Sequence record: PP456879.1
Length of the DNA: 64,000 nucleotides
Strand: one strand, 5' to 3'
A model generated the notes under the pieces. The model worked only from the letters and a program-made list of their open reading frames with translations, was not told the DNA's origin and ran no database searches. The translations under genes were made by a program, and so were the position numbers. Numbering within the stretch: the stretch's first letter is position 1; each line of letters opens with the position of its first letter. Positions 4,877-7,362 of this stretch are shown in pieces.

Positions 4877-4907
4877 ATAAACCCTCCCGTAATGGGAGGG
4901 TTTTATG
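4877..4907. terminator. Bidirectional terminator (CCCTCCC family)
   Basis: aaaCCCTCCC-gtaat-GGGAGGGtttt between convergent genes. Confidence 0.8.
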
Positions 4908-4975: not shown

Positions 4976-5344
4976 TTAATATCCTTCATTAAGTAGTTCT
5001 GCTAGAGCACGTGCCTGTGAAATATCAGTAGAAGCAAAAACATCAGAAAGATAGTTATCATGTTCTTTTGCATTCTGACGCAATTCATCCATTAGATGTT
5101 TATTAGATACCGCCCATACTTTCCACAGATTTTTATAATCATCATATTTGGGATTATACCCGTCTAGTGGTGGTTTTCCTTTACCAGCTTTCCAATGGTT
5201 GGAGTATATGCGATATCCTTTACAATCTAACTGCCAAGCTTCCTCAATTGTTCTGCCATCAGGAAGCCTTGCGTAAAGAGCCGAGAATCTTTTGTCACCA
5301 ACAGATGAACATTCATATCCTCCTCGGCGCTTCCACTGATATAT
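4976..5344 (-). CDS. Unannotated 122-codon ORF with no ATG/GTG/TTG at its 5' end (ATA start or -1 frameshift extension of the polymerase subunit)
   Basis: Hand translation IYQWKRRGGYECSSVGDKRFSALYARLPDGRTIEEAWQLDCKGY...ARALAELLNEGY*; fills the gap to the terminator; the ATA overlaps the upstream TAA (TAATA). Confidence 0.75.
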   Translation of the reverse strand: MYQWKRRGGYECSSVGDKRFSALYARLPDGRTIEEAWQLDCKGYRIYSNHWKAGKGKPPLDGYNPKYDDYKNLWKVWAVSNKHLMDELRQNAKEHDNYLSDVFASTDISQARALAELLNEGY

Positions 5345-7260
5345 TACTTTGGGTTCTTATAGGTATTAATAAACTTCTCTAGCAGGGTGTCCATTTTAGG
5401 AGCACCCATGATCTTCTGTGTGATTTCAATAGCATTAACCCTACCACCTGTTAAGTTTACGCCAACTTCACGGCGATGGTGTTCACTAATTCCTTCCATC
5501 ATTGAGAATTCCATCACACATGTTTCACGTGCAATATTTAGAATCTGACTAACGTTAGGATATGTCGACACGATGTCAAGGTCGGCGATATGACAGAAGA
5601 TTAAGGTTTTATAATTCGGTAAATCTTTAACACACTGCAATCCATTTGGACCTGCCATGTATGATGGTAGTGTAACAATCCAATCATTATGGCCAATAAC
5701 ATATTGATCAAGTTCATGCACCATCTGATCTGAACTTGAACCAATGACACATGGCTCTGGTCTATTCAAATACCAGAAGTGCATATCGTCACATAGTCGT
5801 TTTGGGTTAGAACTAAAGTTCTTATAGTCAGATGCCTTAGAGAATAGACTTATAGAGCGACCAAGGTCATTTACTTGTTCATCAAGTTGTTCTAGTCGAA
5901 TGGAGTCGATGATGTTATAAAGACCATATTTGATTTTATGCTTAGTCTGCATCTCACGGTGCCAATCGATACCACCAAGATGTGCAGTTTCTTTAAAGGT
6001 TAACTTACCAAATTCCATTACATATCTAATAGAATCACCATAGGTAAAGTTATCATTTAATATAAAATCATCCACCGGTACCCATTCATTACTACCTACA
6101 TTTTTAATATATTTAGTAATAACGCCGCCTGGTCGGTCAACTAGTTGTTTATTAAAACCTTCAATAAAATCTTCTAAGTCCTTATCATTTTTAATGGTCG
6201 TGGATTTATCGATGTTTAGTTCTTTTCTAAGAATAGACTCTAACCGATAGTTAGGATCACGTCCTTTAGCTAATCGAGTTACTCGATAAGTTGACATAGA
6301 ATCGATACATTGAAAACTAGAGGGTGCTGTAATCCAATGCCATTGATCCTCCGGTCCTTTAGATTTAGTGACCCCAGATGCAGTGGTGGTCATAGGTTCA
6401 TCAATCTTAAAATGGAAATACCTATAATTCTTAGGTACCGATGGATCAGAAAAAACATCAGCTGGATTAACACCATAGTGTTCTAATGTTTTTAAGATTC
6501 TACCAATGTCGAAGCTAATATTCCAGAATGCGAAGAAATCTGGTTTCCAGGTATGTAGTCGTTTAAAACATTCAATAATAATATCTACTGGTGTTTCAAC
6601 AACCATTACTTCAATATCTAGACCACGTTCTTTAATTAGATGTGATAATACCTCTTCTTTTTGTGCTTGTTCTAATGTCTCTTTCACTGGATCTTCAATA
6701 TCACTAACCCATCGTTTTAAATAGGCTAGGAAAGCTTTGTTCTTATGTGTAACTGACATACAGATAATCTGGCCATCGTTCTCAGCTTCATAAACGTTGG
6801 TTTCGATGTCACCGCCAGCAACAGTGTTTAGAGAGATTAGACCAGGATAACGTTCTTGATAATCATGCTTCAGATAACAGGTTGAACTAACATCACTGCC
6901 ATATAGGTAAGGACTACGCGCTAGTTGACGAAGAGATCTAGCCGAATAGTCACCTAGGATTTTACTAATCTTACGTTTCATGTCAATTTGAGTTGACATG
7001 TATTTAACTAAGTTACGCTCATATTCGTAATCTTTCTTTTCTTTATGGTTACGCATTCCTTTTGCGGTAATCCAAAAAGGACGCTGGTAGTTTTCCCACA
7101 TCCTTAAATTATTTGCAGTTGTACCATCTTCAAAATGAATTCGTTCTTTAACGAAATGCGCATCTGTAAACTTACCAAATTGATCAGTACAATAAGTAAT
7201 ATGTTTGGCTTCAATGCCCTTAATCTTTTTCTTATTTGTAACCTGTTGTTCATTAGACAT
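5344..7260 (-). CDS. Split family-B DNA polymerase, N-terminal subunit (3'-5' exonuclease + motif A; gp82-like)
   Basis: ExoI DIET, ExoII WNISFD, ExoIII YNIID, PolB motif A DLDIVSTYP. Confidence 0.85.
   Translation of the reverse strand: MSNEQQVTNKKKIKGIEAKHITYCTDQFGKFTDAHFVKERIHFEDGTTANNLRMWENYQRPFWITAKGMRNHKEKKDYEYERNLVKYMSTQIDMKRKISKILGDYSARSLRQLARSPYLYGSDVSSTCYLKHDYQERYPGLISLNTVAGGDIETNVYEAENDGQIICMSVTHKNKAFLAYLKRWVSDIEDPVKETLEQAQKEEVLSHLIKERGLDIEVMVVETPVDIIIECFKRLHTWKPDFFAFWNISFDIGRILKTLEHYGVNPADVFSDPSVPKNYRYFHFKIDEPMTTTASGVTKSKGPEDQWHWITAPSSFQCIDSMSTYRVTRLAKGRDPNYRLESILRKELNIDKSTTIKNDKDLEDFIEGFNKQLVDRPGGVITKYIKNVGSNEWVPVDDFILNDNFTYGDSIRYVMEFGKLTFKETAHLGGIDWHREMQTKHKIKYGLYNIIDSIRLEQLDEQVNDLGRSISLFSKASDYKNFSSNPKRLCDDMHFWYLNRPEPCVIGSSSDQMVHELDQYVIGHNDWIVTLPSYMAGPNGLQCVKDLPNYKTLIFCHIADLDIVSTYPNVSQILNIARETCVMEFSMMEGISEHHRREVGVNLTGGRVNAIEITQKIMGAPKMDTLLEKFINTYKNPK
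5347..5353 (-). promoter_or_regulatory. Candidate -1 slippery heptamer C-CCA-AAG
   Basis: AAC CCA AAG TAA ends the polymerase subunit; the -1 frame is open from here for 123 further codons. Confidence 0.4.
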
Positions 7261-7326: not shown

Positions 7327-7362
7327 TCAGCATAAAGCCTCCCCTAGGGGAGGCAATATGTT
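7327..7362 (-). terminator. Terminator hairpin, identical over 36 bp to 54851-54886
   Basis: tcagcataaaGCCTCCCC-ta-GGGGAGGCaatatgtt. Confidence 0.75.

What the first reader, a model, noticed from the sequence alone, without database searches (positions are those of the whole stretch)
4976..5353. DNA polymerase exonuclease subunit ends on a C-CCA-AAG slippery site leading into a start-less 122-codon ORF
Seen: the subunit ends AAC CCA AAG TAA, a phased X-XXY-YYZ heptamer directly before the stop. The -1 frame has a stop just upstream, then reads PKVIYQWKRRGGYECSS...NEGY* to 4976 and fills the gap to the terminator. It has no ATG/GTG/TTG at its 5' end, only ATA in a TAATA overlap. Known: A-AAG is shift-prone in gammaproteobacteria (dnaX tau/gamma, lambda G-GGA-AAG). 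Inference: either a ~761-aa polymerase fusion made by frameshifting, or a TAATG-coupled gene whose start became ATA (non-canonical start, pseudogene or sequencing error).
Basis: partly seen in the sequence, partly recalled or inferred. Interest (0 to 1): 0.75.

Follow-up and report, generated by a model that had tools for sequence, protein, structure and literature searches.

The report
Frameshift extends phiKZ DNA polymerase subunit
In phiKZ-type giant phages the first DNA polymerase subunit gene ends on a conserved ribosome-slipping signal that most likely adds a whole extra 123-residue domain of unknown function, which current annotations and the recent polymerase structure leave out.

Summary
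On the minus strand the 638-codon polymerase gene (7260-5344; phiKZ gp82, DNAP-N) ends AAC CCA AAG TAA. The -1 frame is open from the heptamer (5353-5347) to a stop at 4978-4976, and its first canonical start is codon 88.

The junction is identical in at least 30 independently sequenced phiKZ-type genomes, so it is not a sequencing error.

Thirteen related lineages carry this ORF ("X") in the -1 frame. All have an in-phase X_XXA_AAG heptamer at the junction: C_CCA_AAG in ten, G_GGA_AAG in one, A_AAA_AAG in two. The wobble base of the preceding codon changes with the heptamer. The stop codon and the polymerase tail vary. Eight lineages have no ATG/GTG/TTG at the position where free-standing homologues start.

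X is under strong purifying selection between two start-less lineages (dN/dS 0.05). Metagenomic phages encode polymerase-X as one in-frame protein.

Best explanation: programmed -1 frameshifting makes a roughly 761-residue DNAP-N-X fusion. No conserved 3' RNA stimulator was found, and the product has not been seen experimentally.

X's function is unknown. It is fused elsewhere to DNA and RNA polymerases, helicases, RNase H and AlkB, and may be distantly NADAR-like (inconclusive).

The parts
5344..7260 (-). [quoted passage not shown]
   Evidence: ORF and translation. PHROG 3011 'DNA polymerase', E 1e-241. 98-100% identical to PHIKZ082. Identified as DNAP-N in preprint 10.64898/2026.09.30.755723.
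5347..5353 (-). Slippery heptamer C_CCA_AAG, in phase with the polymerase frame (last two sense codons plus the wobble base of AAC)
   Evidence: It is the only in-phase XXXAAAG in the whole ORF. It is conserved, or replaced by G_GGA_AAG or A_AAA_AAG, in all 13 -1-frame lineages. All three heptamers are described as highly shift-prone in E. coli in PMC5009743.
5344..5346 (-). Zero-frame stop TAA directly 3' of the heptamer ('shifty stop' position)
   Evidence: A stop (TAA, TAG or TGA) directly follows the heptamer in 10 of 13 lineages.
5342..5344 (-). ATA codon at the position where free-standing homologues of X have their initiator Met
   Evidence: Alignment A1. This codon is ATG, GTG, ATA, ACA, ACT, GTT, GTA or GTC in different -1-frame lineages.
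4976..5353 (-). ORF X in the -1 frame: 125 sense codons from CCC to TAT plus TAA. A complete PHROG 9995 domain with no canonical start before codon 88
   Evidence: AlphaFold2 mean pLDDT 96. dN/dS 0.03-0.22 among relatives.
5357..5359 (-). TAA in the -1 frame, two codons before the heptamer. It closes the -1 frame upstream
   Evidence: X frame opens at EPKV....
4879..4903 (-). Intrinsic terminator that ends the polymerase-X transcription unit
   Evidence: 10-bp stem with 6 GC pairs and a T-rich tail.
7337..7354 (-). Terminator-like hairpin upstream of the polymerase gene (matches on both strands)
5257..5341 (-). Candidate 3' RNA structure that starts 5 nt after the heptamer. Weak and not conserved
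   Evidence: MFE -25.6 kcal/mol, z -1.86, 6 of 200 shuffles fold as well. RNAalifold consensus over 11 relatives is only -7.5 kcal/mol, with a covariation term of -0.47.

Best explanation
The polymerase gene and X form one recoded gene.

Most ribosomes terminate at TAA and make the 638-residue DNAP-N. A fraction slip back one base on C_CCA_AAG: the Pro-tRNA moves from CCA to CCC and the Lys-tRNA from AAG to AAA. The slow-to-decode stop codon directly after the heptamer probably helps. Those ribosomes then read GTA ATA TAT... and continue through X. The product is a DNAP-N-X fusion of about 761 residues, in which the variable polymerase tail acts as the tether.

Shown here:
- the anatomy of the junction;
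- nucleotide-level conservation of the signal;
- loss of the start codon without decay of X;
- natural in-frame fusions.

Inferred:
- that slippage occurs in infected Pseudomonas, and how efficiently;
- that the stop is the stimulator;
- what X does.

The fusion partners suggest that X works on nucleic-acid templates beside polymerases and helicases. In a nucleus-forming phage, fusion would also carry X to the replication site. Both points are inference.
For: - Not an error: the junction is 100% identical in at least 30 independently sequenced phiKZ-type genomes.
- Heptamer conservation: all 13 lineages with X in the -1 frame carry an in-phase X_XXA_AAG in the short stretch where the -1 frame is open. 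C_CCA_AAG is in phiKZ, PhiPA3, PS119XW, Phabio, 201phi2-1, Viktualia, L014, L070, L016 and L018. G_GGA_AAG is in L017. A_AAA_AAG is in L023 and Noxifer.
- Wobble base: the preceding codon is AAC, CCC, TCC, CTC, GTC or GCC before CCA, CTG before GGA, and TCA or GCA before AAA. The amino acid varies, but the wobble base always fits the heptamer.
- Uniqueness: with one exception (TTTAAAG in L017) it is the only in-phase XXXAAAG in about 650 codons of each polymerase ORF.
- Start codon: eight of the 13 lineages lack ATG/GTG/TTG at the family's start position. PS119XW, one of these, has a GTG one codon upstream that overlaps its TGA stop. L014 (ACA) is sister to L070 (ATG).
- X is translated: dN/dS is 0.048 between L016 and L018, which both lack a start, and 0.03-0.22 in other pairs.
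- In-frame fusions: P0231 (698 aa, on a contig that also carries a PhiKZ-type capsid gene) and P0393 (919 aa) are natural single-ORF fusions of a gp82-type polymerase with X.
- Other partners: X is also fused in frame to divergent family B polymerases, family A polymerases, T7-type RNA polymerases, SF1 helicases, RNase H and AlkB-like dioxygenases.
- Literature: PMC5009743 names exactly these three heptamers as highly shift-prone in E. coli.
Against: - No trans-frame peptide, second protein band or ribosome-profiling signal was available.
- No conserved 3' stem-loop or pseudoknot and no conserved upstream Shine-Dalgarno-like element was found.
- Shiftiness of X_XXA_AAG is documented for E. coli. 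The tRNA-Lys repertoire of Pseudomonas was not checked.
- PhiPA3, L070, 201phi2-1 and Viktualia also keep ATG or GTG, so X can probably be made on its own in some lineages.
- A sister clade (D6, Psa21 and seven contigs, one of them identical to another at the junction) has X in the +1 frame without any heptamer, so the fusion is not obligatory for X.
- The recent cryoEM study of gp82-gp50 found an active polymerase without X and does not mention a frameshift.
Confidence: 0.8

Rival explanations
1. X is a separate protein. Ribosomes that terminate at TAA reinitiate on the overlapping non-canonical ATA (TAATA), a decayed form of the TAATG coupling seen in PhiPA3.
For: - Free-standing homologues begin with Met exactly at this codon.
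- PhiPA3 and L070 have TAATG. 201phi2-1, Viktualia, D6 and Psa21 have GTG or TTG there.
- ATA is a one-mismatch near-cognate of ATG.
Against: - It does not explain conservation of the heptamer or of the wobble base before it, nor its replacement by two other slippery heptamers.
- It cannot work in L014, L016 and L018 (ACA/ACT), L017 (GTT), Phabio (GTA), L023 (GTC) or Noxifer, where X is still conserved.
- No Shine-Dalgarno sequence precedes the ATA.
- It could still add a little free X alongside frameshifting.
Confidence: 0.1
2. X is a dead remnant in phiKZ: a pseudogene that lost its start and is not translated. At most the annotated 38-residue tail (PHIKZ082.1) is made.
For: - There is no canonical start before codon 88.
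- GenBank records annotate only short fragments.
Against: - The full 125-codon frame is intact in all 47 phiKZ-type genomes matched.
- It is 88% identical to PhiPA3 with dN/dS 0.03.
- Start-less sister lineages show dN/dS 0.05.
- The conserved residues lie mostly before codon 88.
Confidence: 0.04
3. The frame break is a sequencing or assembly error, or the shift happens by transcriptional slippage rather than on the ribosome.
For: A one-base frame offset is what an indel error would produce.
Against: - The sequence is identical in at least 30 independent genomes from different laboratories.
- The same frame relation holds in relatives down to 58% protein identity.
- CCCAAAG has only runs of three, far shorter than known RNA-polymerase slippage tracts (established knowledge, not tested here).
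Confidence: 0.02

Closest known systems
E. coli dnaX tau/gamma -1 frameshift (A_AAA_AAG)
   Same: It is a -1 tandem slippage on an X_XXA_AAG heptamer inside a replicase subunit gene, and it gives two products from one gene. Noxifer and L023 use the very same heptamer.
   Different: In dnaX the shift truncates the protein, and it relies on an upstream Shine-Dalgarno-like element and a 3' hairpin. Here the shift extends the protein by a complete domain, and neither stimulator was found.
Phage lambda G/GT and other tail-chaperone frameshifts (G_GGA_AAG)
   Same: It is a -1 shift near the 3' end of the upstream ORF, and it makes a minor C-terminally extended fusion next to the short product. It is conserved by position rather than by sequence. 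L017 uses G_GGA_AAG.
   Different: That system concerns tail assembly proteins. This one concerns the replicative polymerase, and the appended part is elsewhere an independent, widely distributed domain.
E. coli copA -1 frameshift
   Same: It is an efficient -1 frameshift in a bacterial gene. To my recollection its slippery site is C_CCA_AAG, but that was not confirmed in a text read here. Searches show only the human ATP7B site and the copA pseudoknot.
   Different: The copA shift is driven by a pseudoknot and yields a short 70-residue product. No pseudoknot is evident here.
Overlapping stop-start translational coupling (TAATG/ATGA)
   Same: The geometry of the junction is the same. PhiPA3 and L070 really have TAATG.
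   Different: phiKZ and seven other lineages lack a canonical start codon at that position (PS119XW has a GTG one codon upstream), and no Shine-Dalgarno sequence is present.
NADAR (YbiA, PF08719) ADP-ribose/N-glycoside hydrolase domains, as a possible relative of X
   Same: - Both are small alpha+beta domains.
- YbiA (2b3w) is the only PDB match with TM above 0.5.
- Several NADAR proteins appear among sub-threshold BFVD matches.
- The segment FSAL..DGRT aligns with the NADAR FSNF..DGK motif.
- X has the same kinds of fusion partner that the literature reports for NADAR: DUF4326 and SLOG domains.
   Different: There is no Pfam hit in any of 28 members. hhalign probability is 0.1%. All Foldseek E-values are above 0.8.

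Membership tests
Programmed -1 ribosomal frameshift (tandem slippage) | X_XXY_YYZ heptamer in phase with the upstream frame | tested here: met
   C_CCA_AAG at 5353-5347, in phase.
Programmed -1 ribosomal frameshift (tandem slippage) | -1 frame open from the heptamer into a conserved coding region under purifying selection | tested here: met
   (dN/dS 0.03-0.22).
Programmed -1 ribosomal frameshift (tandem slippage) | Heptamer conserved across relatives at the nucleotide level, synonymous positions included | tested here: met
   13 of 13 -1-frame lineages. Three heptamer versions, with a matching wobble base in the preceding codon. Almost unique within the ORF.
Programmed -1 ribosomal frameshift (tandem slippage) | Stimulatory element (3' hairpin or pseudoknot at 5-9 nt, or upstream Shine-Dalgarno-like sequence) | tested here: inconclusive
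   No conserved structure. The phiKZ fold has z -1.86. A zero-frame stop directly after the heptamer in 10 of 13 lineages is the only recurrent feature.
Programmed -1 ribosomal frameshift (tandem slippage) | Trans-frame protein product detected | not testable with these tools
   The papers read contain no proteomic or ribosome-profiling data on this junction.
Stop-start translational coupling | Canonical start codon overlapping or adjacent to the upstream stop | tested here: not met
   ATA in the window. Also absent at the homologous position in L014, L016, L018, L017, Phabio, L023 and Noxifer, and in PS119XW, which has a GTG one codon upstream.
Stop-start translational coupling | Shine-Dalgarno sequence upstream of the restart codon | tested here: not met
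   The upstream sequence ...TACCTATAAGAACCCAAAG has no GGAGG-like motif.
NADAR domain (PF08719), for X | Significant match to the family profile | tested here: not met
   No NADAR hit at E up to 10 in 28 members. hhalign probability 0.1%.
NADAR domain (PF08719), for X | Same fold as a solved NADAR structure | tested here: inconclusive
   YbiA 2b3w: TM 0.54/0.43, E 5.7. NADAR proteins in BFVD: TM 0.4-0.5, E 0.8-9.
PHROG 9995 (X family, unknown function) | Full-length profile match | tested here: met
   E 1.8e-55, residues 5-125 on profile positions 2-123 of 124.

The most novel reading that the evidence does not exclude
X is a compact NADAR-like hydrolase, or another enzyme that reverses base adducts. 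It clears modifications such as defence-inflicted ADP-ribosylation from templates. phiKZ-type phages use the frameshift to weld a set fraction of it onto the polymerase, so that it is imported into the phage nucleus and travels with the replication fork. This would be a polymerase-tethered counter-defence or repair module.
Probability: 0.2. Interest if true: 0.85.

Novelty: new member of a known kind. Interest (0 to 1): 0.66.

Why it matters
phiKZ is the model nucleus-forming phage, and its replicative polymerase was described structurally only in 2026 as a gp82-gp50 pair plus Rhc. If the frameshift operates, part of the polymerase in infected cells carries an extra conserved domain. No annotation, knockdown or structure has included it.

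It would also give a function-linked handle on a large orphan family (PHROG 9995) that is repeatedly attached to DNA and RNA polymerases, helicases, RNase H and AlkB in many phages.

Practically, dozens of GenBank records should replace two or three spurious short ORFs with one recoded gene.

Tried and rejected
- Sequencing error: rejected, because the junction is identical in at least 30 genomes.
- The strong GAGGAGG-ATG inside X (annotated as a 30-aa ORF in some records): rejected as the start. It is in the wrong frame, lies after the conserved N-terminus, and simply encodes the RRGG motif.
- Conserved 3' stimulatory RNA: single-sequence folds give z from -0.1 to -3.7 with different structures, and the consensus fold has almost no covariation.
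- Pfam, NCBIfam and PDB sequence searches for X: nothing.
- Sequence tests of NADAR homology: negative.
- Pfam on five giant X-containing proteins: nothing. PHROGs gave only one N4-type virion RNA polymerase hit and one virion structural protein hit.
- Literature searches for a reported frameshift in phiKZ gp82: none found. The transposon-mutagenesis preprint's 'gp82' refers to another phage.
- tRNA genes in the window: none.
- Frameshift site in the +1 clade: not resolved. Only the conserved GAAAAGAAG was noted.

Full report
**What the window is**

The region is 100% identical to many Pseudomonas phages of the genus Phikzvirus (PA7, SL2, KTN4 and others) and 98-99% identical to phiKZ itself. 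The genes of interest lie on the minus strand.

The ORF 7260..5344 (638 codons) is the homologue of PHIKZ082. It matches PHROG 3011 'DNA polymerase' at E 1e-241. A 2026 preprint shows that gp82 is DNAP-N. [quoted passage not shown]

**Checking the observation**

The gene ends AAC CCA AAG TAA. One base back, the frame reads TAA GAA CCC AAA GTA ATA TAT CAG TGG and stays open for 125 sense codons to TAA at 4978-4976. There is no ATG, GTG or TTG before codon 88. The codon that overlaps the stop is ATA.

A terminator follows at 4903-4879 and another hairpin precedes the polymerase gene, so the two ORFs share one transcription unit.

The heptamer alone means little in a single genome: it occurs 4 times in the window against 4.6 expected.

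**Not an error, and not a remnant**

The junction is identical in at least 30 independently sequenced genomes.

The downstream ORF, called X here, is a complete copy of a widespread small protein family, PHROG 9995. More than 200 free-standing homologues of about 122-130 residues begin M-[YF]-x-W-x-R-x-G-G-Y-E. Their initiator Met sits exactly where phiKZ has ATA.

GenBank records annotate only fragments of X. These are a 30-aa ORF in another frame and a 38-aa tail, PHIKZ082.1.

**Comparison of the junction in relatives**

I collected 22 distinct lineages in which a gp82-type gene is followed by X. They came from GenBank phages and IMG/VR contigs.

*X in the -1 frame (13 lineages).* Every one has an in-phase X_XXA_AAG heptamer in the short stretch where the -1 frame is open into X.

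| Heptamer | Lineages |
|---|---|
| C_CCA_AAG | phiKZ, PhiPA3, PS119XW, Phabio, 201phi2-1, Viktualia, L014, L070, L016, L018 |
| G_GGA_AAG | L017 |
| A_AAA_AAG | L023, Noxifer |

- **Polymerase tail.** The tail before the heptamer is unalike in length and sequence.
- **Stop codon.** The stop is TAA, TAG or TGA.
- **Preceding codon.** The codon before the heptamer encodes N, P, S, L, V or A. Its third base is always C before CCA, G before GGA and A before AAA. A protein-level constraint cannot explain this. A slippage signal does.
- **Uniqueness.** In each polymerase ORF of about 650 codons this is the only in-phase XXXAAAG, with one exception.
- **Literature.** A review of recoding names exactly these three heptamers as highly shift-prone in E. 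coli (PMC5009743).

*The start codon is not conserved.* At the family's Met position the -1 lineages have these codons:

| Codon | Lineages |
|---|---|
| ATG | PhiPA3, L070 |
| GTG | 201phi2-1, Viktualia |
| ATA | phiKZ, PS119XW |
| ACA or ACT | L014, L016, L018 |
| GTT | L017 |
| GTA | Phabio |
| GTC | L023 |
| nothing alignable | Noxifer |

PS119XW also has a GTG one codon upstream that overlaps its TGA stop.

On a polymerase tree L014 (ACA) is the sister of L070 (ATG). The CCCAAAG state is spread over the tree, and the GGG and AAA versions form a derived group.

X is nevertheless under strong purifying selection. dN/dS is 0.048 between L016 and L018, which both lack a start. It is 0.05 between L014 and L070 and 0.03 between phiKZ and PhiPA3. 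X is therefore translated where no initiation codon exists.

**Natural in-frame fusions**

A profile search of 1.8 billion proteins found X inside many larger proteins.

- **P0231 (698 aa).** It comes from a metagenomic contig that also carries a PhiKZ-type major capsid gene. It is a gp82-type polymerase (30% identity over residues 29-531) joined in frame to X through a glycine-rich linker.
- **P0393 (919 aa).** It is a second gp82-type polymerase with X further along the same chain.

X is also joined in frame to:
- divergent family B polymerases, at their C-terminus;
- family A DNA polymerases;
- T7-type RNA polymerases;
- RecD/Pif1-type helicases;
- RNase H;
- AlkB-like dioxygenases;
- an ArdC-PolyVal protein;
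- DUF4326 and SLOG domains.

A covalent polymerase-X protein is therefore a recurring, selected arrangement.

**Mechanism proposed**

Ribosomes that decode CCA-AAG slip one base back onto CCC-AAA. They then read GTA ATA TAT... through X, giving a protein of about 761 residues. Non-shifted ribosomes stop and give the 638-residue subunit.

The only recurrent accessory feature is the zero-frame stop directly after the heptamer, present in 10 of 13 lineages. I take it as the likely stimulator, which is an inference.

I found no conserved 3' structure. The phiKZ fold has z -1.86, and the consensus fold over 11 relatives has almost no covariation. The efficiency is unknown. In PhiPA3, L070, 201phi2-1 and Viktualia a start codon coexists with the heptamer, so free X may be made as well.

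**What does not fit neatly**

A monophyletic sister clade has X in the +1 frame, overlapping the polymerase tail, with no -1 heptamer. It comprises D6, Psa21 and seven contigs, one of which is identical to another at the junction.

At the Met position the nine loci have GTG (D6, L027, L029, L036), TTG (Psa21), CTG (L025, L033), ACG (L034) or CGG (L024). All share GAAAAGAAG just upstream. Whether they use weak starts or another recoding event is unresolved. This clade shows that X can function without the -1 fusion.

Other limits:
- Shiftiness data come from E. coli, not Pseudomonas.
- The recent cryoEM work obtained an active polymerase without X and does not mention a frameshift.
- No paper found reports one.

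**What X may do**

AlphaFold2 gives a confident small alpha+beta domain with mean pLDDT 96. No solved structure matches significantly. The only match with TM above 0.5 is E. coli YbiA, a NADAR protein.

Among predicted viral structures the sub-threshold matches are enriched in NADAR and DUF4326 proteins. The best, though insignificant, profile alignment pairs X's FSAL..DGRT with the NADAR FSNF..DGK motif. [quoted passage not shown]

I therefore regard a distant NADAR-like relationship as a lead, not a result. Pfam and hhalign do not support it.

The fusion partners point to work on nucleic-acid templates next to polymerases. Because chimalliviruses replicate inside a protein-bounded nucleus, fusion to DNAP-N would also deliver X to the DNA. 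That is an inference.

**Verdict**

The frameshift reading is well supported by comparative evidence and unproven experimentally. It is a new member of a known kind of recoding, in a well-studied model phage, with an unexplored protein product.

Noticed in passing
L002 (PhiPA3, HQ630627.1) 1920-2225: The PhiPA3 homologue of the polymerase gene is interrupted by a group I intron (Rfam RF00028, 71.7 bits, E 4e-18). It sits right after the motif A residues VADLD. GenBank gp085 stops at the intron, and the last 71 codons of the gene are unannotated.
   Followed up: partly
L008, L009, L024, L025, L027, L029, L033, L034, L036 (junction near locus position 2480-2525): In the D6/Psa21 clade X lies in the +1 frame and overlaps the last 8 polymerase codons. 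All nine loci share GAAAAGAAG just upstream. The codon at the Met position is GTG, TTG, CTG, ACG or CGG, so four of the nine also lack a canonical start there. A second kind of recoding (-2 or +1) or weak initiation is possible.
   Followed up: partly
window 4976-5353 (-); L001 2885-2974 and 3109-3225; L006 2762-2878: Public records annotate two short 'hypothetical proteins' here: a 30-aa ORF behind the internal GAGGAGG-ATG, and the 38-aa PHIKZ082.1. Both are by-products or fragments of X. In Noxifer, PS119XW, Phabio, D6 and Psa21 the annotated start of X cuts off the conserved N-terminus.
   Followed up: yes
proteins P0222 and P0393 (not in the window): In two long X-containing proteins a domain named 'A1S_2505 family phage non-structural protein, N-terminal' by NCBIfam (NF049995) lies near X. 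In P0393 it is directly upstream of X, and in P0222 it is downstream. Its function is unknown to me.
   Followed up: no
proteins P0154, P0167, P0216 and about 30 others of 2000-6000 aa: X is embedded in giant phage proteins. One matches the N4-type virion RNA polymerase family and one matches a giant virion structural protein family, which suggests that X is often delivered with the injected DNA.
   Followed up: partly
window 7337-7354: A perfect palindromic GC-rich hairpin (GCCTCCCC TAGG GGGAGGC) between the upstream virion gene and the polymerase gene scores as a terminator on both strands.
   Followed up: no
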